A DNA stretch of 64,000 bases from Ylistrum balloti (lineage: Eukaryota): contig NW_026782299.1 of assembly GCF_031769215.1 (NCBI RefSeq), forward strand, positions 2,542,001 through 2,606,000, read 5' to 3'. Of the stretch, positions 12,897-60,241 are shown in pieces (within the stretch, counting starts at the first letter, position 1; the number at the start of each line of letters is the position of its first letter). The translations under genes and the position numbers were made by a program. Below the pieces are notes generated by a model. The model had not been told where the DNA came from. It worked only from the letters and a program-made list of their open reading frames with translations, and did not search any database.

Positions 12897-15547
12897 TCAA
12901 ACTGAAGTTGTCGCACGTAAAGAAATCGATGACGCTAATTCGTCCCAAAACACAACATTACCATGCAAGTCACCACGGGGATACTCGATATAGGTTTTGC
13001 TCTCAATAATATCCAGTAACGACAGTGGTAAATCTCGAGGCGGAATATCCTCATAGAACACCAATAAAAGGACAGAGTCGCCTCCCCTAGAATATATACT
13101 CTCCATTCGAGCCATGTTAAATTCGAAAATACACCAGTACGAATTAAGATAGTTCCGGGAGAGTATGATAACAGTTTTCCTGCTTTGGTGGATAGCGTTG
13201 GTGATGTTCTGGGCTATGTCTTCCCCTGGTATGAAGTCTCTTTGGTGCAGACAAAGTCGCAGCCCGTGATTGTCTTCCAAATGGATCAGCATCTCCTTTA
13301 CCACGAACATATAATCATCTGAACAATATGATATAAATGCATCATACAGGTAGTCATCATCGTCTTCCGCATTAACGACGGGTCTATAACCACGATACTG
13401 GGTCTTCGCCATGTAAAACAGATAACGCAGTTTCCACCTGTAGCGGTAGATCATACCAGAAATCACAAAGGTTACCGACAACAGAATCACTGAAGCACAC
13501 ACTGCTATGATACCTATATAACTATCACACGACTTACTTATTTCCAACAAGGTTGTATCAAAATTGGAAAACGTTATTTCTGTTCCGTTGGAGAAAGCAC
13601 ATTTGTATGTTAGAAAATGTTCAAACAAATCTTTGTTTCGACCTAACCATTTAAGGAAATCGAGTTCCTCACACGAGCAGTCCATACGATTCCCTTGCAA
13701 ATTAATGGTTAAATTGTTGTCCTTTAAGCTATCTATCTGGTCTCGTTGATCCCGATTTATTCTTCTAAGCTGATTATGGGTAAGATCGATATATTGTAGA
13801 TGTTTCATATGTGATATATCGAGACTTAACTCATTCAATGCGTTGTTACTCAAATTCAGTATCTGAAGTTCATGTTGGTTTCTGAAGAGCAGTGCCGGTA
13901 ATGTATATATGTGATTTCTAGATAGGTTGATAATTTTCAAACTCTGAAGAGTCTTGAATATGTTGCCGTTAACATCTTCGTAGAGCACCAACCCTAATAA
14001 ATTGTTTTGAATTAATAGTGTCTCTAAGACATTTTCGACCATAAAGAAATTTTCAGAGATGTGAGTACAGTAATTATTTGATAAATCGATATATTTCAAA
14101 AATGGCACGTTTACTATTGTCCCTTTCCATGAATGTAAGAAATTATTACTGACATCAATAACTGTGAGATTAATATTTCTAAAATCAATTGCACCGATTT
14201 CAAAATCAAAAGCATTATAACTATAGTAAAGTTCTCTAAGCGAAGGGGGCAGAGGATATGTAGATAAAATATGACTGTCATGATGCAATTTTAAGAGAGG
14301 GTTCCTGTTACAGTCGAGTAACTCTGTCGATACGCTGAAGGAAATTTTCTCATCTGACGATGGTGGTGCCCGCCAATCTTTACAATCACTTTTACCCGAT
14401 TGCAAATTGTGAGAATACTTTTGGTAATCCGCATGTACTATTTGAATACTTGGTAAAGACGACATTAGCTCAATAATGTATATGCCAAATGTTAGGCTAT
14501 TATATTTTGCTGATATGAATTCTAATGTTTTAGGAATTAATCCTGCCACGCCAACATCAAGCATAACCAAACGATTATTGTCAATGTACACATGTGTTAA
14601 GTTTGTGTTTTTCAGGTGTATAACATCTTCCCTGTATATAACTGTACTAGGTCCAAACGTACAATGTAAACCACTAATGTCTAAAATACGAATACGAGTA
14701 TATTGTAAATCATGTGTAACGTTCGGAAGTACTCGAAATGTCAGACATTCGTTGAAAGAAATATTTAGCGAATAGAGATTTGTCAATCCACGAAAAGTTC
14801 CAATGTCAATTTCATGAATATTGCAACTGGAGATATCTAAATATTTGATATTTGACATGTTTTGAAAGTAATCGAACCTTAATCTTCCTAGGTGACATAC
14901 TCCGCTGTTCCCAGATAAATCAAGGGTCCTCAACTTAGTCATCTGCAAGAACCTTCCGTCAAATCCGGATAAATCCACTCCATCTAAAAGTAATGTCTCA
15001 AGCATATTCAGTTTTGAAATGCTTACTGGGAAATGTAAGTTTCTTGATACATAATGAATGTTATTCTGTTGTATGTTCAAGTATCTTAATTGAGTCAATC
15101 CCTCAAATATATTTTCGGAGTAAATTGCGTTAGTATATCGAAGTTTGTTATCACTTAAATCTAAATATTGTAATTGTTTCATATCCTTAAAAGGAAATCC
15201 GATGAACATGTCTAAGTTGTTTCTCGATAGGTCCAAGTATTTAACCGTATCCGGAATTCCTTCACCTGAAATATTTTTTATATTGTTTCCATTCAGATGG
15301 ATCACAGTGACATTAGGATGAAACGTTGGAATCGCATCGATATTCAGATATGAACAGTCTGCCACTATGCTATTATCTTTAGAACTATGGCAATGACACA
15401 AGTCCTTAGATGTGCAATGGAATATAGAGATTTTTGAGGAAGTCGGTAATGACGCCAACGAGCCTGTCGTTGTATTCAAGTTATCCTTGCTGACATCAAA
15501 CCCTTGTATTTCTTGTACACTAATACAGCCAACGTACAACATAATAC
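12897..15547 (-). CDS. TLR: Toll-like receptor A, main exon (exon 2): LRRNT, LRRs, single LRRCT, TM, TIR (sccTLR type); 891 aa with exon 1
   Basis: LxxLxLxxN repeats, LRRCT GNRMDCSCEELDFLKWL, TM IGIIAVCASVILLSVTFVISGMIY, TIR box1 YDAFISY and BB loop RDFIPGEDI. Acceptor TTTTCCATTTCTAG| at 15548. Confidence 0.96.
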
Positions 15548-21542: not shown

Positions 21543-24500
21543 TCACTCTGCCATCAATAGTACTAACTGAGTAATAGGACGGATATACGAAACCGATCGT
21601 CCATTACGAATTGTCTTAACTCTGACTTTACGAACAAGACCATCGTGACTAGGAAAAACACATTCAACAATTCCCATTGGCCAGTCATTACGATGAGAGT
21701 CATGATCCTTCAGCAAAACAATGTCACCTTGTTTCAAGTTTGAACGTTCGTGATTCCACTTTTGTCGCGTTTGTAGCGATTGTAGATAGTCTCTTCTCCA
21801 CGCGTTCCAAAATTTCTGGGCCAATACCTGAACACATCGCCATTGGGATCGAAACATGTCTTTCACTGAGAAGTCTACCAAGGTTAGATCTACATTTGGA
21901 ACGTCAGTCTTTTGCGTAATGAGAGTACTTGGCGACAATACCACTGGGTTTTCAGGGTCGTCAGATACGGGTACCAGTGGTCGCTGGTTCACTATAGCAC
22001 ACGCTTCGGCTAGAAAAGTCGTAAGCACTTCATGCGTGAGGTGTTTAGTGTCAGTATTACGCAACATGTTGTCCAGAATCCTTCTAACGGTACCAATAAG
22101 CCGTTCCCAAGATCCGCCCATATGGGAGGCATATGGAGGATTAAAAGTCCATGTGATGCTTTCCTCTGAAAGAAAGTCTTTTACGGCTTTGTCCTCGACG
22201 TCAATAACATTCAAGTTAAGTTCCTTAACGGCTCCTACGAAGTTAGATCCTTTGTCCGACCTAATGTGCTTTACCGGTCCTCTGAGCGCGATGAATCTCC
22301 GCAGTGCGTTAATGAAGGAAGATGTGCTCATCTCCTCTACGACCTCAATATGTATCCCTCTCGATACCATGCAACAGAATATTATAGCCCAACGTTTTGC
22401 GTTAGCTTGTCCTCCCCTAGTTTTTCTCGCGCGCACATTCCATGGTCCAAACGCATCCAATCCAATGTAAGTGAAAGGCGGACATGGTGTCAAACGATCC
22501 TGCGGTAAAGTACACATTTTTTGTTCCACAAACTTTCCTCGGAGTTTCCTGCACACGACACAGTGATGTAAAATAGAGGAAATTAATCGCTTTCCTCCCA
22601 CTAGCCAATAACCAGAAGAACGTATTTTACCCTCCGTAATATGTCGGCCTTGGTGTTCCGATTTCTCGTGATAATGTCTCACGATTAGAGTAGCCACGTG
22701 ATGTTTTGCTGGGACAATGATCGGATCCTTTCCAGGTAAGTCAATGTCACTATTCTGAATCCTACCACCAATCCTCAGGAGCCCCTCGTCGTCTAGAAAC
22801 GGCGACAATTTCAACAAAGAATTGTTCCTGTTTAACGGCAGTCCTTTCTGCAAACAGTCGATTTCCATCGAATAAAACTCTTGTTGAACAACCTTCAGTA
22901 TGAGGTTCTTTGAATCGTTAGCAAAACGCAACACGTCTGGATTGTCTGTTCCGTTGTGATGACGATGCGCGACTTGTTTCAGTAAGGTTATTGCACTAAC
23001 CAACCTAGTCCATGACGAAAATCTCGCGAAACGGTCAGGATCGAGAGCGAAGTCCTTCCGAACGTGAGTTTTCATGACATTTGTTTCGTTGACGAACGTT
23101 ATTTCACCGTCGTCGTTACCGATCAACGGAAATACTTGGTCTCTATACGAACTTTGCAAATCACTCATGACGTCAACGGGTCCGTTCAACCACACTGACT
23201 TTCCAACGTCTTTCGCACGCATTGGCCTAGTCGCACTATCGGCAGGGTTACATTCACTAGAAACGAAACTCCACTGCTGTTTGGAAGATAACTTCAGAAT
23301 CTTGTCAATCCGATTAGCAACATAAACGAAGAAACGGCGCGTGTCGTTAAATATATACCCTAGTACTACCTGACTGTCGGTATAGTAGTAGGTGGCGTCA
23401 AACACAACATCGACGTGTTCGGATATAAATAAACCGAGTTCAGTAGCAAGAACAGCCGCGCATAGTTCTAGTCTTGGAATGGTATGTCCGTGGGAAGGCG
23501 CTACTTTCGATTTGCCAAGAACGTATCCAACAGAAGCATTTTCCTGTACGTCATAAATTTTCATGTATGCTACTGCGCCTATGGCATCCTTTGACGCGTC
23601 TGAGAATACGTGTAGTTCACGACGAATTGCCTTTTCCAATGACGAATTGGAGTAACATCTCGAAATTTCTAACTGTTCCAGATCTTTAAGCGAAGACCTC
23701 CATTTTTTCCAATCAGAGTTCAAGTCCGGAGGTAAAGGGTCATCCCAGTCAAGATCCTTTGACGATAACACATTTCGCATTAATAGTCTGCCTCCGAGAA
23801 TAACTGGTGCCACAAAGCCGAGGGGGTCGAATACACTATGTATTGTAGAAAGTACGCCTCGTTTGGTGAACGGTTTCACCTCATCAGAAACACTAAACGT
23901 GAACGTATCACAACCGACTTTCCAACGTAGTCCGAGACTCCTATGAACGATATCATCGAAGTCCATATCGCAAATTTCGCTGGTATCCTCTTTTGGAAAC
24001 TGCTTTAAAACATCAACACTGTTCGACGAGAACTTGTGCAAGTGAATGTTTCCGTTTTGCCGTAATCGAGCTTGAGTGTCTCTCAACAACTGCACTGCGT
24101 GACCTTCGTCAGATACAGAGGTCAACCCATCGTCAACGTAGAAGCTCTCTTTGACGAAACAACACACCTCGTCGCACGCGGAAGAATCGATATGGTCGCA
24201 AGCAGATTTCCTTAATCCAAGTGTGGCAATACACGGAGAAGACGAGTTGCCAAACACATGCACGCACATACGAAATTCCCTTAGCGGTTGTGTGGGATCA
24301 TTATCTTGAAACCATAAGAAACGTAGAAAGTTTCTGTCACGCTTGTGCACATAGAAGTTGAAGAACATCTGTTCAACATCGGCCATAATCGCAATTCGTT
24401 CCTTCCTGAATTTCATTAACACACCAACCAAATTGTTTATGAGATCCGGACCTGTCATGAGAATGTCGTTAAGCGAATGTCCATTAAACTTTGCCGCCGA

Positions 24501-25748
24501 ATCGAACACGACTCGGATTTTGTTGGGTTTTTGGGGATGATAAACCCCGAATATCGGTAGATACCATGCTTCCTCGCCGTCTTGTAACTCGGGAGCTACC
24601 TCTGCATGCTCCTTGTCAAAAATGTTTTGCATAAACGCACAAAACTGTTCGCGCTTAGTAGGATTTTTCAGTAACGACTTTCGTAGATTTTCTGCGCGAT
24701 GCCTTGCCTGATCCATATTGTTTGACAAAGTAGGTCGTTCCTTTTTTAGCGGTAACGGTGCACTCCAATTACCGTACTCGTCCTTAATAAACTCCCCTTC
24801 CATGACACGCATGAATTCCTTATCCTGTTGCGAGTAACCAGGAATATCATCGAATTTTGTTCTTTGAAATATGTCCATTCCAATTGGCAACTTATCGGAT
24901 TTTTCAAACTGAGCCTTGAAGTAATTCGGACACGGATCCATGAGAGTAGGTCTGCCATCCGGTAAAACGACCGTTTTGCTCACAGTTATGACCGTAGGTT
25001 TGTGAACGAGACCTAGGCACGATTCTCCTACAACTACCCAACCGAATTTTAATTTCTGTGCATATGGTTCACGTTCATGTCCAGTTCGCTGTTCCAACAC
25101 ATGATGCGCCGAAATGAGATCTCTGCCAACGAGAAGCAATATGGGCGTATCGTTTTCATACTCTGGGATAAGATGAGCAATGTCCTGCATGTGACTATAG
25201 TGTCGTGCAACTTCCGGTGTAGGTATTTCCTGTTTCACATTCGGAATATGATTGCATTCTGTAATCAACGGTAATTTTAATGAGTATTCCTTGTCCAATG
25301 ATTCCATTACGTATCCGCTGCCTTGCCTCCCGGTTACCTGAATTTCACCGGCACATGATGAAAGTACGTATCCGGTTTCCGTAGAATGATCTCCAAAATA
25401 ATCGAAGAACTCACTTTTGGCCAATGTCCGATTGCTCTGCTCATCTATAATGGCATAAGCACGCAACACATTATTAAGTTGTCCGTCCTTGTAGATATTT
25501 ACTAACACCGTTTTTGCACACGATTTCCCCACGAAGGGACCGGTTTCACCGCACAACTGTGTACACTTGGAATTTATCTTACGATTGTCTCCCCTGATAC
25601 TTGTCCTTTCCTCGCCGTGAGACTGACGGGGCTGATATTTGTCATCATGAAACATAGTGCAATGCGATGAACCTTTACACACAGTACAGATTACTTTTTC
25701 TGTACAGTCCTTGGCCAAATGTTTGTCCTTACAACACTTAAAGCACAC
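21543..25748 (-). CDS. pol: BEL/Pao pol region: Cys-His knuckles, aspartic protease, RT, RNase H, integrase
   Basis: CFKCCKDKHLAKDC (CX2CX4HX4C), protease IIDEQSNRT, RT YVDDGL, RNase H LHVFSDAS...IPRLELCAA...DSQVVLGYI, integrase HHCC plus GLDAFGP/SDKGSNF/WERLIG. The ORF start is a GTG at a frame break, not a true start. Confidence 0.96.
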   Translation of the reverse strand: MCFKCCKDKHLAKDCTEKVICTVCKGSSHCTMFHDDKYQPRQSHGEERTSIRGDNRKINSKCTQLCGETGPFVGKSCAKTVLVNIYKDGQLNNVLRAYAIIDEQSNRTLAKSEFFDYFGDHSTETGYVLSSCAGEIQVTGRQGSGYVMESLDKEYSLKLPLITECNHIPNVKQEIPTPEVARHYSHMQDIAHLIPEYENDTPILLLVGRDLISAHHVLEQRTGHEREPYAQKLKFGWVVVGESCLGLVHKPTVITVSKTVVLPDGRPTLMDPCPNYFKAQFEKSDKLPIGMDIFQRTKFDDIPGYSQQDKEFMRVMEGEFIKDEYGNWSAPLPLKKERPTLSNNMDQARHRAENLRKSLLKNPTKREQFCAFMQNIFDKEHAEVAPELQDGEEAWYLPIFGVYHPQKPNKIRVVFDSAAKFNGHSLNDILMTGPDLINNLVGVLMKFRKERIAIMADVEQMFFNFYVHKRDRNFLRFLWFQDNDPTQPLREFRMCVHVFGNSSSPCIATLGLRKSACDHIDSSACDEVCCFVKESFYVDDGLTSVSDEGHAVQLLRDTQARLRQNGNIHLHKFSSNSVDVLKQFPKEDTSEICDMDFDDIVHRSLGLRWKVGCDTFTFSVSDEVKPFTKRGVLSTIHSVFDPLGFVAPVILGGRLLMRNVLSSKDLDWDDPLPPDLNSDWKKWRSSLKDLEQLEISRCYSNSSLEKAIRRELHVFSDASKDAIGAVAYMKIYDVQENASVGYVLGKSKVAPSHGHTIPRLELCAAVLATELGLFISEHVDVVFDATYYYTDSQVVLGYIFNDTRRFFVYVANRIDKILKLSSKQQWSFVSSECNPADSATRPMRAKDVGKSVWLNGPVDVMSDLQSSYRDQVFPLIGNDDGEITFVNETNVMKTHVRKDFALDPDRFARFSSWTRLVSAITLLKQVAHRHHNGTDNPDVLRFANDSKNLILKVVQQEFYSMEIDCLQKGLPLNRNNSLLKLSPFLDDEGLLRIGGRIQNSDIDLPGKDPIIVPAKHHVATLIVRHYHEKSEHQGRHITEGKIRSSGYWLVGGKRLISSILHHCVVCRKLRGKFVEQKMCTLPQDRLTPCPPFTYIGLDAFGPWNVRARKTRGGQANAKRWAIIFCCMVSRGIHIEVVEEMSTSSFINALRRFIALRGPVKHIRSDKGSNFVGAVKELNLNVIDVEDKAVKDFLSEESITWTFNPPYASHMGGSWERLIGTVRRILDNMLRNTDTKHLTHEVLTTFLAEACAIVNQRPLVPVSDDPENPVVLSPSTLITQKTDVPNVDLTLVDFSVKDMFRSQWRCVQVLAQKFWNAWRRDYLQSLQTRQKWNHERSNLKQGDIVLLKDHDSHRNDWPMGIVECVFPSHDGLVRKVRVKTIRNGRSVSYIRPITQLVLLMAE

Positions 25749-27489
25749 GCCGTGTTTTAAGAATTTCCCTCTTTTCGTCCTTGGATTTCGATAGAAACAG
25801 GTGGCAATCTGATAACAAATGCTTCACTTCTCTCGCACTGTCATGAAGTGGGCACAAAAATGCTGTAGGCACATTATTAACTTCCGTTTTCTTTGAAAAG
25901 ACGTATGCATTCCTACTTCCGGTAGACGCAGTACGACGTTGTTCTTTGCTGACGCTAGGTACCGCAGTACCATCGGTGTAATTGAAACTCGGGTTGTTCA
26001 TTCGCGAGCTCATTTCCTGTATGAACCTCTCGAAAACACTGAATTTCGGATATGTAACATTGTGCTCGGTTTGATATCTGCACGCATAGTCAGTCCATTT
26101 GTTTTGTATGAACACGGGTAACTTGCAAACAATTGGGTTTATACCGCTGGACGAATCGTAGTACGCCATTATCGAGCTGAACGCCGTGTTTTCCTTTACT
26201 GCCTGAATTTCCGCCAATATGTTCGAAAGATCAAACAATTTCTGACCATCTCGGTTCGTTAATTTCGGGAATTTGTTTAGCCTTTCCCTCAAAGATAACT
26301 CAATTTGCTCGGGCGCGCCGTACTTCTCACTGAGCCTAGTCCAGATTTTACACAAGGCTTGGGGTGGGTCGTGTATGTTTGCAGCACGTAGACTTACAGC
26401 CTGTTTTCGAGATTCTGGCCCCAACCATTTCGATAATAAGTCTAATTGTTCTTGAGGGCTTACATCAAGTTCCTTTACAACATTTAGGAATGACATTTTC
26501 CAGACACGATACTCCTCGGGTTTATCAGTAAACTGAGTGAGTCTACCCATAAGCAAGTCTTTCTTTAGCATAAATTTGGTCAAATCATTCAGTCCAGTTA
26601 CACACTGACCTGGGGTGAATTCTCGAGCCTCAACGTTTAACGGTACTTTATGTGAATAGGGGTCGAATGTTTCATAACCGGTGTTCAAATTTTCGGCTTG
26701 ACTTTGCACAAATTCAACTGTCCTAGACTTCCTGTGTAACTCCTCATCATCCGACGGTGCTTGTGAACAATGTCTGATAGGGCTACCAGTGTCAATAACG
26801 TCATCCATAGCCTTAAGCTCGGCTGCTGCCTCGTCCAGTTCTCTTTGTGATTTTAACAGCTGAAGGGATTTTTGCAATTCGGCCTCTTTCTCAACAAATT
26901 TTAGCCTCACTTTGGCCGCTTCCAATTTCGCTCGTTGTTTCATATATACTGAACTGACCCTGGAGATGTTAGTTATGCTAGAACGCACTGAGGTTTTACT
27001 TGTTTTCGACTTTATTGACATAATATCCGAAACGCCGTTTTTATATTCACTTACACTATGCCGAGGATTTTCCTCGACTACAAACCCCTGTGAAATGTTA
27101 TCGACCACAGATACAGTTTGAACTGGTTTTATTTTGTCAATAAATGATTGAATTTGGTCCAAAACCGTGTCACACTGGGATTTTAATGTTTCCACAGCTG
27201 TCATATGAGATAATAATTCTTCCTGGCCTTGTTCCGTTCTACTTTCTTCCAAATATTTACTGAATTTGGTTGAAACTTGTTCATAGGATTCATATGATTG
27301 GGTAATGTCTGATGCCAAGGATTTTAATTCATCCAAGTTCATATTTTCATACTCAATATCAGTTATGAGACAATCTAAATTTCTGTATAAATTTAACAGT
27401 CTATGTTTATACTTGCCGACTGTGTCCTCAAATGCCTGATGTGCCTTTTCCGTCATTTTGATGGTTCTTTTTCCCGGGTTTTCAGCCAT
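25738..27489 (-). CDS. gag: BEL/Pao gag region
   Basis: The first ATG (MAENPGKRTIK) lies 11 nt past the 5' LTR. Coiled-coil N-terminus, FTDKPEEYRVWKMSF gag core, first knuckle CPLH...H....C. Ends out of frame with pol. Confidence 0.9.
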   Translation of the reverse strand: MAENPGKRTIKMTEKAHQAFEDTVGKYKHRLLNLYRNLDCLITDIEYENMNLDELKSLASDITQSYESYEQVSTKFSKYLEESRTEQGQEELLSHMTAVETLKSQCDTVLDQIQSFIDKIKPVQTVSVVDNISQGFVVEENPRHSVSEYKNGVSDIMSIKSKTSKTSVRSSITNISRVSSVYMKQRAKLEAAKVRLKFVEKEAELQKSLQLLKSQRELDEAAAELKAMDDVIDTGSPIRHCSQAPSDDEELHRKSRTVEFVQSQAENLNTGYETFDPYSHKVPLNVEAREFTPGQCVTGLNDLTKFMLKKDLLMGRLTQFTDKPEEYRVWKMSFLNVVKELDVSPQEQLDLLSKWLGPESRKQAVSLRAANIHDPPQALCKIWTRLSEKYGAPEQIELSLRERLNKFPKLTNRDGQKLFDLSNILAEIQAVKENTAFSSIMAYYDSSSGINPIVCKLPVFIQNKWTDYACRYQTEHNVTYPKFSVFERFIQEMSSRMNNPSFNYTDGTAVPSVSKEQRRTASTGSRNAYVFSKKTEVNNVPTAFLCPLHDSAREVKHLLSDCHLFLSKSKDEKREILKTRRVL

Positions 27490-27500
27490 GAGTTTTTTAC

Positions 27501-27949
27501 TGTGATGTCGAGTGAGTCCAAAGAAATACAAACTAAACGCCTTTAATGAGTTCCTTTATTACATATACAAAGTTCCCAGTTCCTATAGCCATAGTTCACA
27601 ATCATCACAAACACAGTGTAGGGGTTCTTGGTTGCACCTAGCTTGCGCCCCAACCTGCGGTAAAAAACTGAAAAATACAGAAATTAACCTGTCCTTAGCA
27701 CATATTTTGTCTTTAGAGCCACAAAACAAACATATTTCAACAAAATTAATCAAATTTCAAACGTTTAAACCGTATTAAAGTTACCTCATTGGTCACCTAA
27801 GCCTTGCTAAATCCGTAAGTCTGTTTCTTTTGGACTTTCACGTAAACATATCCCATGATGCATTTTTCCACGATGTACAAAGAATGAACTCTGAACCCTG
27901 ACCTGACTACCAGAGCAGACGGACAATATAAAACTAGCGTTTCACTACA
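27501..27949 (-). repeat. 5' LTR of BEL/Pao element
   Basis: Direct repeat of 20928-21376. AATAAA on the minus strand at 27560-27555. Confidence 0.97.
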
Positions 27950-28491: not shown

Positions 28492-31160
28492 TCATACTGT
28501 AGTTGTCGCACGTGAAGAAATGGATGTTGCTAGTTCGTCCCAAAACACAACATTACCATGCAAGTCACCACGGGGATACTCGATATAGGTTTTGCTCTCA
28601 ATAATATCCAGTAACGACAGTGGTAAATCTCGAGGCGGAATATCCTCATAGAACACCAATAAAAGGACAGAGTCGCCTCCCCTAGAATATATACTCTCCA
28701 TTCGAGCCATGTTAAATTCGAACATACACCAGTACGAATTAAGATAGTTCCGGGAGAGTATGATAACAGTTTTCCTGCTTTGGTGGATAGCGTTGGTGAT
28801 GTTCTGGGCTATGTCTTCCCCTGGTATGAAGTCTCTTTGGTGCAGACAAAGTCGCAGCCCGTGATTGTCTTCCAAATGGATCAGCATCTCCTTTACCACG
28901 AACATGTAATCATCTGAACAATATGATATAAATGCATCATACAGGTAGTCATCATCGTCTTCCGCATTAACAACGGGTCTATAACCGCGATACTGGGTCT
29001 TGGCCATGTAAAACAGATAACGCAGTTTCCACCTGTAGCGGTAGATCATACCAGAAATCACAAAGGTTACCGACAACAGAATCACTGAAGCACACACTGC
29101 TATGATACCTATATAACTATCACACGACTTACTTATTTCCAACAAGGTTGTATCAAAATTGGAAAACGTTATTTCTGTTCCGTTGGAGAAAGCACATTTG
29201 TATGTTAGAAAATGTTCAAACAAATCTTTTTTTCGACCTAACCATTTAAGGAAATCGAGTTCCTCACACGAGCAGTCCATACGATTCCCTTGCAAATTAA
29301 TGGTTAAATTGTTGTCCTTTAAACTATCTATCTGGTCTCGTTGGTCCTGTTTGATTCCTCTAAGTTGATTATGGGTAATATCGAGATATTGAAGATGTTT
29401 CATATGTGATATATCGAGACTTAACTCATTCAATGCGTTGTTACTCAAATTCAGTATCTGAAGTTCATGTTGGTTTTTGAGAAGTAAGGCTGGTAAGGTG
29501 TATATGTGATTTCTAGATAGGTCCAAAGTTTTTAAACTCATAAGGTGCCTGAATATTTTACCATTAACATCTTTATATAGCACCAATCCTAATAAATTGT
29601 TCTGAACTAGCAGTGTTTCTAATCTATTTTTATCCATTAAGAAGTTATCAGAAATATAGGAACAATAATTATTGGATAAATCAGCATGTTTAAGGTGTTT
29701 AAGATTAAGTAGAGGTCCTTTCCATGAATGAAATAAATTATTACTGAAATCCATTATTGTGACGTTATTGTCGCGGAAATGAACCCGACCGATTTCAAAA
29801 TTCATTGCATTATTACTGTAGTACAATTCTCTAAGTGATTGTGGAACCCTAATTTGTGTGATTGTATCTTTGTTTTTAGAGCTCTTTATATGTAATAATG
29901 GATTTCTATTACAACTGAGCAATTCAGTAGTTTGTCCGAAGGTCACCAAGTCACGTGACGGTGGGGCACGCCAATCATGACAATCACTACTTCCAACTTC
30001 CAAATTATGAGGATTTCCCTGATGTTCTGCGTGTATTATTTCAATATTCGGTAACGAGGACACGAACTCGATATAATATAGCCCATATGATAGATCATTG
30101 TCTTTAACTGATAAGAAAGTCAATGACTCAGGAAGTTTTCCTATCGCGCCTATATCAAACATAGATAACCGATTGCTCTCTAGGTATAAATCCGTTAAGC
30201 TGGTATTTTTCAAATGAATAATATCGTTCCTGTATATAACTGTACTAGGTCCAAACGTACAATGTAAACCACTAATGTCTAAAATACGAGTACGAGTATA
30301 TTGTAAATCATGTGTAACGTTTGGAAGTACTCGAAATGTCAGACATTCGTTGAAAGAAATATTTAGAAAATGAAGTTGTGTCAATCCACGAAAAGTTCCA
30401 ATTTCAATTCCATGAATATTGCAACTGGAGATATCTAAATATTTGATATTTGACATGTTTTGAAAGTAATCGAACCTCAATCTTCCTAAGTGACATACTC
30501 CGCTGTTCCCAGATAAATCAAGGGTCCTCAACTTAGTCATCTGCAAGAACCTTCCGTCAAATCCGGATAAATCCACTCCATCTAAAAGTAATGTCTCAAG
30601 CATATTCAGTTTTGTAATGCTTACTGGGAAATGTAAGTTTCTTGATACATAATGAATGTTATTCTGTTTTATGTTCAAGTATCTTAATTGAGTCAATCCC
30701 TCAAATATATTTTCGGGGTAAATTGCGTTAGTATATCGAAGCTTGTTACCACGTAAATCTAAATATTGTAATTGTCTCATATCCTTAAACGGAAAATCGT
30801 GAAAATTTTCCAACTGGTTTCCAGATAGGTCCAAATATGAAATAGTTTCCGGAATTCCTTCACTGGAAAAGTTTTGGAGATGATTTCCCTGAAGATATAT
30901 TTCTGTAACGGTGGGCTTAAATTGGGGAATTGCATCGATATTCATGAAAGAGCAGTCTGCGACAAGAACGCCGACTTTAGGACTGTAACAGCGACAGATA
31001 TTTCCGACTGTACAATTTTCCCTCAATGTGGTGTTTTCTGTTCCGATCAATTGAGTTGGGTTTGTTATTGCAGTAACATTCGTTCTGTTCGATTTATATC
31101 GATTGGGGAGCCAACTTTGTACTCTGTTCATCTTAAAACATCCAATAAAAAGGAGAATAC
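28492..31160 (-). CDS. TLR: Toll-like receptor B, main exon (exon 2), sccTLR; 897 aa with exon 1
   Basis: Same architecture as TLR-A. Acceptor TATTTTTTCAG| at 31161; the exon opens with GILLFIGCFK ahead of the ORF-track Met at 31131. Confidence 0.96.
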
Positions 31161-57939: not shown

Positions 57940-58146
57940 NNNNNNNNNNNNNNNNNNNNNNNNNNNNNNNNNNNNNNNNNNNNNNNNNNNNNNNNNNNNN
58001 NNNNNNNNNNNNNNNNNNNNNNNNNNNNNNNNNNNNNNNNNNNNNNNNNNNNNNNNNNNNNNNNNNNNNNNNNNNNNNNNNNNNNNNNNNNNNNNNNNNN
58101 NNNNNNNNNNNNNNNNNNNNNNNNNNNNNNNNNNNNNNNNNNNNNN
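57940..58146. other. Assembly gap (207 N)
   Basis: Run of N. Confidence 1.
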
Positions 58147-58213
58147 AGTGATTAGTTAATCATCACATAATGCCGTGAAACATATCGTGACGTTCCTAAA
58201 GAGAAAAGAAAAC

Positions 58214-58954
58214 TCATTTCGTTTTTACTGTTTCGTTCAAGGGTGTGTCACAATTGCATGTATCCCCTCCAGTTTCCAAAAATAAATTTCCGTTTTCCTC
58301 ACACCCTGCGTTGATGTTCAGCACCGTTGTTGGGTCAGCAGTAAAACGAACGTTGTCACAACCTTTCCACTGATCATCTGCTAAGTATTTAAAGTCACTG
58401 AAACATGCCTTCCGTTTCTCATGAAAACTTTTCCCATCGCGCCGGAAGTCTTCAACGAATGCGACGCAATCGCAAATCAATTTTCCTTGTGTCAAAGTCT
58501 TAAGAGTGGCAATGTGGAACCACTCATTCTTCCTCTGGTCAAAGTAATGACCAGAGTACGCCGTCCATGTTCCGTCCGTCTCCGAATCCACTCTGAAGAT
58601 TGTCTTTTCATTCAAGGCCCAGTCGTATGGTAATAAGCACCTCAGTCCTGTTCCTTCCCCTCCAAACCTCTGAATGTCTACACCTTGACCTTGGTAAGTC
58701 GCCTTTGCCTGTCGGTCAATCTCTGGATCGTCGTCGGTTTTATTGTCCCAGACGGAAAATATCACTACCTTTTTCCCGTCGTAGAGCTCTTGAATTCCCA
58801 TGTATCCACACCGGAAGTTGATAGCGCAGAAGTATGTACCGGTTTGAGAAAGACTGACGCTTACTGTGTTCTGAGCGGAAGTGGCGTGATCAGGCACTCT
58901 GTATCTCAGGTGGACAGATCGAGCGGCATTCGGTTCCACACATCGGTCAGCCAT
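58214..58954 (-). CDS. Intronless DUF3472-family protein (about 246 aa from MADRC; a Met 6 codons upstream at 58972 is also possible)
   Basis: Motif series ARSVHLRY, GTYF, GYMGIQ, VIFSVW, GQGV...FGGEGTG, YDW, W.HIA, AFVEDF and RFTAD...NINAG...FLETGG matches, from memory, bacterial DUF3472 proteins. The track's upstream extension (58978-59083) lies before an acceptor TTTTGTAATCCAG|. Confidence 0.8.
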   Translation of the reverse strand: MADRCVEPNAARSVHLRYRVPDHATSAQNTVSVSLSQTGTYFCAINFRCGYMGIQELYDGKKVVIFSVWDNKTDDDPEIDRQAKATYQGQGVDIQRFGGEGTGLRCLLPYDWALNEKTIFRVDSETDGTWTAYSGHYFDQRKNEWFHIATLKTLTQGKLICDCVAFVEDFRRDGKSFHEKRKACFSDFKYLADDQWKGCDNVRFTADPTTVLNINAGCEENGNLFLETGGDTCNCDTPLNETVKTK

Positions 58955-60241
58955 CGTGCAAGCTGCAAACATATAATCTGGATTACAAAATTTGAAAAAA
59001 AAGCTGTATAGCATATGTATCTGTTTTGCATTTCCTCTGTAAATACTTTCAGTTACCACTGAGAATCTTAAAATGACGTTCATTTTGTTGTTGTGGTATC
59101 AGAAAGACTGAAACAATAGCCTGTTCCATGATGGAAGTTTTCAGGCTGATTAACTGAATGTTTCCATTATTTTACTATCTGTAAACTTTTGGAGACGACT
59201 AAAAAAACTGTATATATAAGGATTAACTTTTTAAATGTTGTTAACGTTATCTGGCGGGACATAACTACAATTGTCCCGGAGTAAATTGAGTAGTTTGCCA
59301 GCTATGTAAAATTTTACTGAGTTCAAATTGTAGTTATCGACCGATAAACCGAACAAAAGAGAAGATTAAGAAATGAATAGATGTATATATAGTATTGATA
59401 AAACGTTCTTTTTATATGACGTCATCGGAACAATGACGTCCGTCGGTGAGACGATGCCTGGACACAGAGGGAGTTGAAGATACGACAAACCTTTCAACTA
59501 ATCAACAAAACTCTCTTTGTCAGGTGTTTAGGCGCTAGAGATAGAAAGAAGTCACTGGATCGCTGACGTGAAGGATATTTTGCCTCCAAGAAGTTCAATG
59601 TCGACTTGAGAAAACGACGGTCGTGTACATAGTCCGTCGGGGACATTGTTGTGTAAATCGATGATCAATGTACGGGATCTCAATGCATTTATCTATTGTT
59701 TTGGGACAATTAAGTAAGCTTTATGAAACACCCAATTTGTTCTGTACTAACTATAATAACTAATACCACATAATAATTTGTAAATACGAAAATATGTTAA
59801 ATATTATATTAAATATAACAAAATTGGGGCAAACATCCAATTATTTTGTAAACGTTGCTGATTTTAATAGCCCTTTTAGAGACATCTTTTGTTCATTCAT
59901 TAAATCTTCCTGTAATAGATTTATAGTGGTTGCTATTTTTCTATTTTACCTATTATCTGTAAGGCTACCTTACTAAACATTGCCTAGTGTCTGCTAGTGT
60001 TACTTTGCACCGTTTTTCACAGGATGTACCGAACTTTTAAGGGTATTTATTTCAGTATGCACCTAATAGAAATACACGCAGTTAATGTGTTTAGCATAAC
60101 CCAAAACACCGGTACAAATGAACAAGCATGTCAATGATCAGATGTACGACAATGCGTCTAGCAAAGAGAATGCGAGTTATTCTGTTCATATCGTCATGTA
60201 ACCATAGCATGCTGTGTCCACCACCAGAAATGGAGTCTTAC

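What the first reader, a model, noticed from the sequence alone, without database searches (positions are those of the whole stretch)
58214..58977. Bacterial-type DUF3472 gene embedded in animal DNA: horizontal-transfer candidate
Seen: an intact intronless coding region, visibly more GC-rich than its flanks, without a signal peptide, and contiguous upstream with SINEs, microsatellites and a LINE. From memory, the motif chain matches uncharacterised DUF3472 proteins mainly of Bacteroidetes and Planctomycetes type, with scattered eukaryotic members. Inference: a domesticated bacterial gene of unknown, possibly carbohydrate-related function near immune receptors. Caveat: it ends 67 nt from an assembly gap.
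Basis: partly seen in the sequence, partly recalled or inferred. Interest (0 to 1): 0.75.

Follow-up and report, generated by a model that had tools for sequence, protein, structure and literature searches.

The report
Scallop gene of bacterial mucinase family
A scallop carries an intact, selectively maintained gene that looks like an old acquisition from bacteria and belongs to a family whose bacterial members cut sugar-coated mucus proteins; similar transfers of this family into other animals are already published, so it is a new example, not a new kind of event.

Summary
On the minus strand, 58214-58954 is an intact single-exon gene for a 246-residue protein. It matches Pfam DUF3472 (now labelled BPSS1860) at E 1.5e-60.

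It is not contamination. A separate DNA run of the same species covers the gene and its flanks at equal depth. Single-exon orthologues sit in chromosome-scale assemblies of other scallops, pearl oysters, true oysters and one starfish.

Among scallops only the coding part aligns, and dN/dS is about 0.1. All 14 animal copies form one clade. They lack the bacterial signal peptide and share a 3-residue deletion.

An exhaustive search found no other lineage inside this clade. Its nearest relatives are two signal-peptide-less proteins from unidentified gene-dense microbes, then Lentisphaerota/Kiritimatiellota proteins, inside a Planctomycetota-dominated subfamily. Branch supports favour nesting in bacteria, but AU tests do not exclude the alternative.

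The predicted fold (pLDDT 95) matches the Bacillus cereus di-glutamate mucinase HC7 at Z 28. HC7's catalytic Glu200 and a second invariant Glu are conserved, so a hydrolase acting on glycosylated substrates is the likeliest function.

Transfer of DUF3472 into animals is already published for centipedes. This is a new member of a known kind. Expression in this species is untested.

The parts
58214..58954 (-). Single-exon coding sequence of a 246-aa DUF3472/BPSS1860-family protein (stop TGA at 58214-58216, ATG at 58952-58954)
   Evidence: ORF list. Pfam E 1.5e-60. 100% identical 246-aa gene model on a 4.06 Mb contig. dN/dS 0.07-0.10 against two other scallops. AlphaFold model with pLDDT 94.9.
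58655..58657 (-). Codon of Glu100 in the RFGGEGTG motif, the candidate second catalytic glutamate
   Evidence: Invariant in 119 aligned family members. Aligns to Glu131 (FGGEGTG) of the mucinase HC7. Coordinates. Its catalytic role is inferred, not verified.
58451..58453 (-). Codon of Glu168 in the FVEDFRRD motif, equivalent to catalytic Glu200 of HC7
   Evidence: The wild-type HC7 chain (8pmu) reads FQEDW and the Glu200Ala mutant chain (8pn3) reads FQADW at the column aligned to the family's FvEDf motif. Invariant in 119 sequences. Coordinates.
58963..58978 (-). Pyrimidine-rich tract ending in CAG (AG at 58964-58963), 8 nt upstream of the ATG: putative 3' splice site of a 5'-UTR intron. The coding exon would then begin at 58962.
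   Evidence: The same pyrimidine tract plus CAG sits at the same distance from the ATG in Pecten maximus and Mizuhopecten yessoensis, although the flanks otherwise do not align. A 990-nt contig from a fourth scallop has purine-rich sequence there and an in-frame TAG upstream, as a spliced mRNA would. No RNA evidence from this species.
58955..59083 (-). Upstream in-frame extension of the ORF (43 codons), judged non-coding
   Evidence: Absent from the database gene model. Not conserved at DNA level in other scallops: alignments start at 58939 and 58985.
58147..58213 (-). First 67 nt of the 3' untranslated region, cut off by the assembly gap
   Evidence: Sequence. No AATAAA within it. An independent contig of run X1 runs 47 letters further into the gap; I did not read or use those letters.
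57940..58146 (.). Assembly gap (207 N) between the gene and the TLR-bearing part of the window
59323..59518 (.). High-copy interspersed repeat upstream of the gene
   Evidence: Summed contig depth is 219 in run X1, against 7.6 on the gene and 7-8 on unique flanks.
60852..61128 (.). (TTGTG)n microsatellite, 56 copies
   Evidence: Tandem Repeats Finder. It also accounts for the GC-skew spike.

Best explanation
This is a genuine, single-copy, functional scallop gene. Its ancestor was acquired by horizontal transfer from a microbe carrying the PVC-type (Planctomycetota / Lentisphaerota / Kiritimatiellota / Verrucomicrobiota) single-domain branch of the bacterial DUF3472 family.

The transfer predates the split of scallops, pearl oysters and true oysters, and the gene was inherited vertically afterwards. 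The one starfish copy is probably a second hop.

Compared with its bacterial relatives, the animal gene has no secretion signal and carries a 3-residue deletion. It has drifted towards host base composition and has probably gained a 5'-UTR intron.

The protein is a one-domain jelly-roll of the same fold as the Bacillus cereus di-glutamate mucinase HC7. It keeps the glutamate equivalent to HC7's catalytic Glu200 (Glu168) and a second invariant glutamate (Glu100). It therefore most likely works as a two-glutamate hydrolase that cleaves glycosylated substrates, either an O-glycopeptide bond or a glycosidic bond. Because it has no signal peptide, it probably acts inside the cell.

Shown: presence in host DNA, orthology, selection, fold, and residue conservation.
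Inferred: direction and timing of the transfer, the intron, catalysis, substrate and location.
For: In the host genome:
- Gene model on a 4.06 Mb contig.
- An independent DNA run of another individual covers the gene at depth 7.6 and unique flanks at 7-8. One contig joins the CDS to 158 nt of upstream flank.

Orthologues:
- Single-exon copies in Pecten maximus (44 Mb chromosome), Mizuhopecten, Ostrea edulis (75 Mb chromosome, inside a cadherin intron) and Patiria miniata (19 Mb scaffold, no gaps within 10 kb).

Selection:
- Between scallop genera only the CDS aligns.
- dN 0.12-0.14, dS 1.2-1.7.

Distribution:
- The profile search lists 14 animal sequences at 325-459 bits, then bacteria at 288 bits or less.
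- The exhaustive search of 1.84 billion representatives gives one representative for the clade at 429 bits, then 279.

Tree:
- Animals form one clade: 85/99 with 97 rows, 99/94 with 59 rows.
- Animals plus two microbial proteins (P0258, P0323) plus four Lentisphaerota/Kiritimatiellota proteins group at 98/97 and 100/98, inside Planctomycetota-dominated bacteria.
- The gene tree among bivalves, scallops | (pearl oysters | oysters), fits my recollection of the accepted relationships among these groups, which I did not check here.

Shared derived traits:
- The 3-aa deletion, loss of the GNGW motif and loss of the signal peptide.

Composition:
- 47% GC against a bacterial median of 58% (GC3 49 against 71).

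Function:
- Model pLDDT 94.9.
- Structure matches: 4QHW Z 29.9; HC7 Z 28.1 at rmsd 2.5 over 226 residues; then glutamic peptidases Z 13-16 and GH16-type glucanases Z 14.
- Glu200 of HC7 aligns to Glu168. HC7 is described as a di-glutamate mucinase (PMC13003899).
- Close bacterial relatives are fused to BNR (sialidase-like), GH16 or M60 modules.

Precedent:
- DUF3472 transfer from bacteria to animals, several times over (PMC7864903).
Against: - AU tests do not reject a tree in which the close bacterial subfamily is one clade and the animal/eukaryote-like rows lie outside it: p 0.365 with 97 rows and p 0.179 with 59 rows. Rejection at p 0.002 came only when Daphnia was included in the constraint.
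- The distant outgroups sit on saturated branches, so the root is insecure.
- Without the Lentisphaerota/Kiritimatiellota group, the animals attach to the bacterial backbone with support of only 65.
- No RNA run of this species was found, so expression, the intron and the transcript ends are untested here.
- The role of Glu100 as the second catalytic residue is my inference; the primary HC7 paper is not in the library.
- The one family member with genetics, BPSS1860, is described as a surface adhesin, not an enzyme.
- A cytosolic location is hard to reconcile with mucin-type substrates, which are made in the secretory pathway.
- Absence from mussels, ark shells and other starfish rests on protein databases, not on searches of their genomes.
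Confidence: 0.7

Rival explanations
1. The immediate donor was not a bacterium but a signal-peptide-less microbial lineage of unknown kind (compact eukaryote, giant virus or unusual bacterium), which itself had the gene from PVC bacteria. Loss of the signal peptide would then predate entry into animals.
For: Two unnamed proteins, P0258 and P0323, lack a signal peptide and carry a C-terminal SH3-like tail. They are sister to the animal clade at 98/92 and 95/61. They lie on gene-dense 6 kb contigs next to a GNT-I glycosyltransferase. The nearest clusters of that enzyme are all eukaryotic, and its best named relative is a haptophyte at 35% identity.
Against: Another neighbour, a PLP enzyme, looks bacterial. 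Gene spacing of 10-90 bp would also suit a bacterium. Both proteins sit on long branches (1.3-2.2), and the tree tool warns that they meet each other directly. A sister position does not show who gave to whom.
Confidence: 0.25
2. The gene is an old eukaryotic or animal gene inherited vertically and lost in nearly all lineages; the likeness to bacteria reflects common ancestry rather than transfer.
For: AU tests cannot reject animals lying outside the close bacterial subfamily. A starfish and bivalves share the gene.
Against: The clade holds three bivalve families and one starfish and nothing else among 1.84 billion representatives. The starfish sits inside the bivalves rather than outside them. 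Daphnia groups with Verrucomicrobiota, and Seison stayed unresolved on a very long branch, apart from the bivalve clade. Animal-to-bacterium identity (40-48%) is about the same as scallop-to-oyster identity (48-52%). All deeper branches of the family are bacterial.
Confidence: 0.05
3. Bacterial contamination or a mis-assembled bacterial fragment next to an assembly gap.
For: The gene ends 67 nt from a gap and is more GC-rich than its flanks.
Against: Depth equals that of the flanks in an independent run of another individual. Upstream of the gene the DNA is gap-free to the end of the window, 64000. Orthologues lie in gap-free stretches of three other chromosome-scale assemblies. The best bacterial identity is only 47%. 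There is no signal peptide. GC3 is 49% against a bacterial median of 71%.
Confidence: 0.02
4. The protein no longer cuts anything. It is a glycan- or surface-binding module, like the Burkholderia adhesin BPSS1860 that now names the Pfam family.
For: BPSS1860 mutants lose 90% of host-cell attachment and the protein is on the bacterial surface (PMC7998038). Jelly-roll folds are common in lectins and CBMs.
Against: Both candidate catalytic glutamates and the motifs around them are invariant in all animal copies and in 119 family members. An oyster-like fragment that has lost both (Glu to Gln twice) is truncated. An intracellular protein cannot be a surface adhesin. No biochemistry on BPSS1860 excludes catalysis.
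Confidence: 0.2

Closest known systems
HC7, the di-glutamate mucinase of Bacillus cereus (PDB 8PMU, 8PN3, 8PN5; Narimatsu et al. 2024 Nat Catal, cited in PMC13003899)
   Same: Same Pfam family: the depositors name the chain 'DUF3472 domain-containing protein'. Same jelly-roll fold, Z 28.1 at rmsd 2.5 over 226 residues. Catalytic Glu200 and the FGGEGTG glutamate are conserved.
   Different: Only about 20-23% identical. HC7 is a 659-residue secreted multidomain enzyme with a carbohydrate-binding module that tunes its activity. The scallop protein is the bare 246-residue domain with no signal peptide. Activity is untested.
BACCAC_02064 of Bacteroides caccae (PDB 4QHW), 'putative two-domain sugar hydrolase' (DUF5077 + DUF3472)
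   Same: Best structural match, Z 29.9 over 243 residues at 24% identity. Profile E 5e-59.
   Different: It has an extra N-terminal DUF5077-type domain and a signal peptide. Its function was never determined. The FVEDF motif reads FLENF.
Secreted single-domain DUF3472 proteins of Planctomycetota and other PVC bacteria (for example loci L002-L081)
   Same: Closest sequence relatives at 40-48% identity over the full length, with all motifs shared.
   Different: They carry a signal peptide of about 30 residues, 3 extra residues after the WD..DP motif and a GNGW motif. GC is 58%. Many are fused to GH16, BNR or phosphatase-family modules.
Centipede venom DUF3472 proteins acquired from bacteria (Undheim and Jenner 2021, PMC7864903)
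   Same: Same family and the same kind of event: bacterial DUF3472 genes fixed in animal genomes. That paper states that transfer to animals happened several times.
   Different: According to the paper, many of the DUF3472 sequences it analysed have the N-terminal DUF5077 domain, some centipede proteins are found in venom, and the Strigamia loci have introns. I did not compare centipede sequences with the scallop gene. The scallop clade is a single domain with no signal peptide and a single-exon CDS. No bivalve name appears in that paper's text or held supplements.
BPSS1860 of Burkholderia pseudomallei (surface attachment protein, PMC7998038)
   Same: The look-up of encoding contigs tables label PF11958 'BPSS1860', so I take it to be a family member; I did not align its sequence.
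   Different: It is a surface-exposed virulence adhesin with a signal sequence. Its enzymatic activity was not examined.

Membership tests
Pfam PF11958 (DUF3472 / BPSS1860) | Score above the curated gathering threshold over most of the profile | tested here: met
   205.5 bits against 24.8, profile positions 9-255 of 269.
Pfam PF11958 (DUF3472 / BPSS1860) | Jelly-roll fold of the solved members (4QHW, 8PMU) | tested here: met
   Model pLDDT 94.9. Z 29.9 and 28.1 at rmsd 2.5. TM by query 0.87 and 0.79.
Di-glutamate mucinases (HC7 type) | Glutamate equivalent to catalytic Glu200 of HC7 | tested here: met
   Glu168 in FVEDF aligns to the residue that differs between the wild-type (FQEDW) and Glu200Ala (FQADW) chains. 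Invariant in 119 sequences.
Di-glutamate mucinases (HC7 type) | Second catalytic glutamate | tested here: inconclusive
   Glu100 (RFGGEGTG) is invariant and aligns to HC7 Glu131. I could not read the primary paper to confirm which residue is the second catalytic one. I could not measure the Glu-Glu distance because model coordinates are not exposed.
Di-glutamate mucinases (HC7 type) | Secretion signal and accessory carbohydrate-binding module | tested here: not met
   No signal peptide. A single domain fills the whole 246 residues. HC7 uses a CBM5.
Di-glutamate mucinases (HC7 type) | Cleavage of mucin-type O-glycoproteins | not testable with these tools
   Needs recombinant protein and glycopeptide or mucin-reporter assays.
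Horizontally acquired, domesticated gene in an animal | Physically part of host chromosomal DNA, not a contaminant | tested here: met
   Equal depth of gene and flanks in an independent run. 4.06 Mb contig. Orthologues in other assemblies.
Horizontally acquired, domesticated gene in an animal | Patchy distribution in the recipient group | tested here: met
   Only Pectinidae, Pteriidae, Ostreidae and Patiria in the clade. Limit: these are protein databases; other genomes were not searched by tblastn.
Horizontally acquired, domesticated gene in an animal | Recipient sequences nested inside donor diversity | tested here: inconclusive
   Branch supports of 98/97 and 100/98 join the clade to a Lentisphaerota/Kiritimatiellota group inside PVC bacteria. 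AU tests do not reject the alternative, p 0.365 and 0.179.
Horizontally acquired, domesticated gene in an animal | Purifying selection after transfer | tested here: met
   dN/dS 0.07-0.10 among three scallop genera. dS is near saturation, so the ratio is approximate.
Horizontally acquired, domesticated gene in an animal | Expression and host-type gene structure | tested here: inconclusive
   No RNA run for this species. A conserved acceptor-like motif and a probable spliced transcript from a fourth scallop. Ostrea contigs of about 2.2 kb from separate runs begin and end within 7-14 nt of each other, which suggests a transcript.

The most novel reading that the evidence does not exclude
After entering an early pteriomorph bivalve, the already 'animalised' gene (no signal peptide, 3-residue deletion) moved again between animals, from the oyster lineage into the bat star Patiria miniata. 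That would be a gene of bacterial origin passed on by animal-to-animal horizontal transfer, perhaps through feeding or a shared parasite or virus. The gene-dense microbes that carry the SH3-tailed sister proteins would be candidate shuttles.
Probability: 0.3. Interest if true: 0.7.

Novelty: new member of a known kind. Interest (0 to 1): 0.45.

Why it matters
Three things would follow if this holds.

First, it adds a well-documented and very old case to the short list of microbial genes kept by animals. It is shared by scallops, pearl oysters and true oysters.

Second, it extends the published finding that DUF3472 genes entered animals repeatedly. That finding currently covers centipedes, and here also Daphnia and a rotifer.

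Third, the family was linked to a defined chemistry in 2024: two-glutamate cleavage of mucin O-glycoproteins. The bivalve protein is therefore a cheap, testable candidate for an animal-encoded enzyme of this type. Mucus handling is central to feeding and defence in bivalves.

The starfish copy nested among bivalve copies, and the unidentified microbial sister proteins, give a concrete lead on how such genes travel.

It is not a new kind of system, and its position near Toll-like receptor genes has no shown meaning.

Tried and rejected
- **RNA evidence.** The one search for RNA runs returned only a DNA-like run with flat depth and no joints. The transcript, the first exon and the poly(A) site could not be mapped.
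- **Upstream exon.** I searched for it with the 52-nt leader of the probable transcript L090 in the window and in two scallop loci. Only chance 7-11-mers matched.
- **Synteny.** Scallop flanks do not align outside the CDS. The fetched loci (10 kb either side) are too short to reach the TLR genes, so synteny was not settled.
- **Rooting with Bacillus plasmid homologues.** The branch saturated at length 10 and the Bacteroidota outgroup fell inside the ingroup. That root is unreliable.
- **Removing the Lentisphaerota/Kiritimatiellota group.** The animals then attached to the backbone with support of 65.
- **AU tests.** Starfish outside the bivalves, p 0.118. Bacteria as one clade, p 0.365 and 0.179. 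None decisive.
- **P0079.** It looked eukaryote-like because of its short N-terminus, but it lies on a plainly bacterial contig.
- **The contigs carrying P0258 and P0323.** Cluster look-up gave no names. Neighbour genes point both to eukaryotes and to bacteria. Left unresolved.
- **ORFs flanking the starfish gene.** No Pfam match.
- **NCBIfam.** Nothing for the protein.
- **Literature.** The Nat Catal 2024 paper on HC7 is not held. No held paper's main text names DUF3472 in bivalves.
Full report
**What is there**

Bases 58214-59083 hold a 289-codon open frame on the minus strand. The public gene model that matches the window exactly is 246 residues long, starts at MADRC and sits on a 4.06 Mb contig. 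The coding sequence is therefore 58214-58954, with TGA at 58214-58216.

The 43 extra upstream codons are not conserved in other scallops, so I treat them as non-coding. The protein matches Pfam PF11958 (DUF3472; the contig tables label this accession 'BPSS1860') at 205.5 bits, E 1.5e-60, over nearly the whole profile. NCBIfam has nothing for it.

The gene is 46.7% GC (GC3 49%). Its flanks are about 30-39% GC, and the two intronless LRR-TIR (Toll-like receptor) ORFs at 12897-15542 and 28492-31131 are 36%. A run of 207 Ns (57940-58146) begins 67 nt after the stop codon. I did not fill it.

**Host gene or contaminant**

The window comes from a scallop. The best relatives are Pecten maximus (80% identity), Mizuhopecten yessoensis (79%) and a fourth scallop known only from a 990-nt contig (77%).

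The only public run found to hold the stretch behaves like low-coverage DNA of another individual of the same species. Depth is flat at 7.6 on the gene and 7-8 on the unique flanks. About 1% of flank bases differ, one base differs in the CDS, and there are no joints. One of its contigs covers 58147-59112, which joins the CDS to 158 nt of upstream flank. The next contig continues to 60834. That first contig also reaches 47 letters into the gap, and I did not read or use those letters.

Stretches at 59323-59518 and 63047-63830 are high-copy by depth. Microsatellites lie at 60852-61128 and 63250-63322.

Orthologues are single-exon genes in four other assemblies:
- Pecten maximus, on a 44 Mb chromosome.
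- Mizuhopecten yessoensis.
- Ostrea edulis, on a 75 Mb chromosome, inside an intron of a cadherin gene on the other strand.
- The starfish Patiria miniata, on a 19 Mb scaffold.

The Pecten, Ostrea and Patiria copies have no gaps within 10 kb. Contamination can be set aside.

**Is it maintained**

Between scallop genera only the coding part aligns, at 77-79% DNA identity. The flanks do not align. Nei-Gojobori estimates are dN 0.12-0.14 and dS 1.2-1.7, a ratio of 0.07-0.10. Because dS is near saturation the ratio is approximate, but constraint is clear.

In the other individual the single CDS difference changes His147 to Arg.

All three scallop genomes have a pyrimidine tract ending in CAG exactly 8 nt before the ATG. 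In the window the AG is at 58964-58963. The contig of the fourth scallop has purine-rich sequence at that point and an in-frame TAG further up. That is what a spliced mRNA with a non-coding first exon would look like. I could not find that first exon by similarity, and no RNA run of this species was found. The intron is therefore an inference.

In Ostrea, contigs of about 2.2 kb from separate runs begin and end within 7-14 nt of each other and are colinear with the genome. This suggests an unspliced transcript there.

**Who else has it**

A profile of ten animal sequences recovered 14 animal proteins:
- Four scallops.
- Two Pinctada paralogues, plus a Pinctada-like sequence (69% identical to one of them) from an unnamed assembly.
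- Six oyster sequences.
- Patiria miniata.

These score 325-459 bits, and the next hits are bacterial at 288 bits or less. The exhaustive search of 1.84 billion representatives gave one representative for the whole clade (429 bits), followed by 279 bits. No other lineage belongs to this clade in those data.

The closest bacteria, at 40-48% identity, are mostly Planctomycetota. Verrucomicrobiota, Lentisphaerota, Kiritimatiellota, Abditibacteriota and Acidobacteriota also appear.

Animal proteins have 6-16 hydrophilic residues before the conserved RSVHL motif. Of 168 bacterial or metagenomic relatives, the median is 31 residues and 94% have a hydrophobic stretch there. All animal copies also share a 3-residue deletion and lack the GNGW motif.

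The bacterial genes have a median of 58% GC and 71% GC3, so the scallop gene has moved most of the way to host composition.

**Trees**

With 97 rows, the animals form one clade (ultrafast bootstrap 85, SH-aLRT 99). The order is scallops, then pearl oysters, then starfish plus oysters. The Bacillus outgroup branch is saturated, so that root is unreliable.

Among signal-peptide-less representatives from the exhaustive search, Daphnia pulex/pulicaria and the rotifer Seison turned up. Daphnia groups with a Verrucomicrobiota protein (98/67) and is a separate acquisition. Seison is unresolved on a very long branch.

Two unnamed proteins, P0258 and P0323, have no signal peptide and carry a C-terminal SH3-like tail. 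They are sister to the animal clade at 98/92, or 95/61 without Daphnia. Together, these 16 rows join four Lentisphaerota/Kiritimatiellota proteins (DUF3472 fused to a BNR sialidase-like module) at 98/97 and 100/98, inside Planctomycetota-rich bacteria.

The two proteins lie on gene-dense 6 kb contigs. One neighbour is a eukaryote-type GNT-I, whose best named relative is a haptophyte at 35%. Another neighbour is a bacteria-like PLP enzyme. The organism is unresolved.

The AU tests are not decisive:
- Close bacteria as one clade is not rejected: p 0.365 with 97 rows and p 0.179 with 59 rows.
- It is rejected at p 0.002 only when Daphnia is part of the constraint.
- Starfish outside all bivalves is not rejected: p 0.118.

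My reading is as follows. Transfer from a PVC-type microbial source into an ancestor of scallops, pearl oysters and oysters is strongly favoured. The grounds are the distribution, the shared derived characters and the branch supports. It is not proven by topology tests, and the last donor may not have been a bacterium.

**Function**

The AlphaFold model built from 119 sequences is confident (pLDDT 94.9, pTM 0.91) and all-beta. The structural matches, in order, are:
- 4QHW, a Bacteroides 'putative two-domain sugar hydrolase': Z 29.9.
- 8PMU/8PN3/8PN5, 'HC7' crystallised with O-glycopeptides: Z 28.1, rmsd 2.5 over 226 residues.
- Glutamic peptidases (neprosin, eqolisins): Z 13-16.
- GH16-type glucanases: Z 14.

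HC7 is described in PMC13003899 as a di-glutamate Bacillus cereus mucinase that cleaves mucins bearing Tn and T O-glycans. The primary paper is not held.

In the profile alignment, the wild-type and Glu200Ala chains of HC7 differ at FQEDW/FQADW. That column is the family's FVEDF motif, which is Glu168 in the scallop protein. HC7 Glu131 (FGGEGTG) aligns to Glu100. Both residues are invariant in the ten aligned animal copies and in 119 family members.

The context of bacterial relatives points to breakdown of glycoconjugates. They are fused to BNR, GH16, M60 and phosphatase-family modules. A Bacteroidota member sits next to SusD, and a Bacillus member sits next to an M60 peptidase.

The only family member with genetic data, Burkholderia BPSS1860, is a surface attachment factor.

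I therefore favour a two-glutamate hydrolase acting on glycosylated substrates. Because it lacks a signal peptide it is probably intracellular. I put about 0.5 on catalysis of this general kind and much less on mucin itself as the substrate. A purely binding role is the main functional rival.

**What is already known**

Undheim and Jenner (PMC7864903) showed bacterial DUF3472 genes in centipede genomes and venoms. They state that the family entered animals several times. Their text and held supplements name no bivalve, and no held paper's main text names DUF3472 in bivalves.

This is therefore a new member of a known kind. It belongs to a distinct, signal-peptide-less, single-domain clade in pteriomorph bivalves. 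Two open questions remain: the starfish copy, and the unidentified microbial sister proteins.

The TLR genes are 27 kb away and beyond the gap. I found nothing that links them to this gene.

**Limits**

- There is no expression evidence from this species.
- Absence in other animals rests on predicted-protein collections.
- The root is insecure.
- Catalysis is untested.

Noticed in passing
L085:10001-10729 (Patiria miniata scaffold JADOBP010000014.1): The only echinoderm copy sits inside the bivalve clade as sister to the oysters (100/98; 62-67% identical to oysters, against 47-51% to scallops). It lies in gap-free DNA of about 40% GC whose flanks resemble no bivalve locus. The AU test does not reject a position outside the bivalves (p 0.118).
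   Followed up: partly
L093:1772-2749 and L094:1144-2166 (Logan runs SRR22388005 and DRR438522): Two DUF3472 proteins without a signal peptide and with a C-terminal SH3-like tail, on gene-dense contigs, are the closest non-animal relatives. Neighbour genes look partly eukaryotic (GNT-I) and partly bacterial (PLP enzyme), so the organism is unknown.
   Followed up: partly
protein P0125 (189 aa, ENA; oyster-like): A truncated oyster-type copy in which both candidate catalytic glutamates are glutamine (FGNQGTG and FVQDF). It is probably a decaying or catalytically dead paralogue.
   Followed up: no
proteins P0234/P0341 (Daphnia pulex, D. pulicaria) and P0329 (rotifer Seison nebaliae): Further animal DUF3472 proteins without signal peptides. 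Daphnia groups with an Opitutaceae (Verrucomicrobiota) protein and so looks like an independent acquisition. Seison is unresolved on a very long branch.
   Followed up: partly
L086:10001-10735 (Ostrea edulis chromosome OX387712.1): The oyster orthologue lies inside an intron of a cadherin gene on the opposite strand. Contigs of about 2.2 kb from separate runs share nearly the same ends, which suggests an unspliced transcript of that length.
   Followed up: partly
window 58515: The other individual (run X1) carries C instead of T. This changes His147, a residue invariant in the ten aligned animal copies, to Arg. A few bacterial relatives have Arg or Lys at this position.
   Followed up: partly
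window 12897-15542, 28492-31131 and 21543-27531 (all minus strand): Two intronless LRR-TIR (Toll-like receptor) ORFs of 881 and 879 aa flank a BEL/Pao retrotransposon with intact-looking gag-like and pol ORFs (597 and 1401 aa).
   Followed up: no
proteins P0005 and P0124 (Pinctada imbricata): Two paralogues are reported with the same longest contig (71.2 Mb). One of them (P0124, 270 aa) is on a long branch with a longer N-terminus.
   Followed up: no
window 63382-63939 (minus strand): A 185-codon ORF with no Pfam match, overlapping the high-copy stretch seen by depth at about 63047-63830. It is probably part of a repeat.
   Followed up: no
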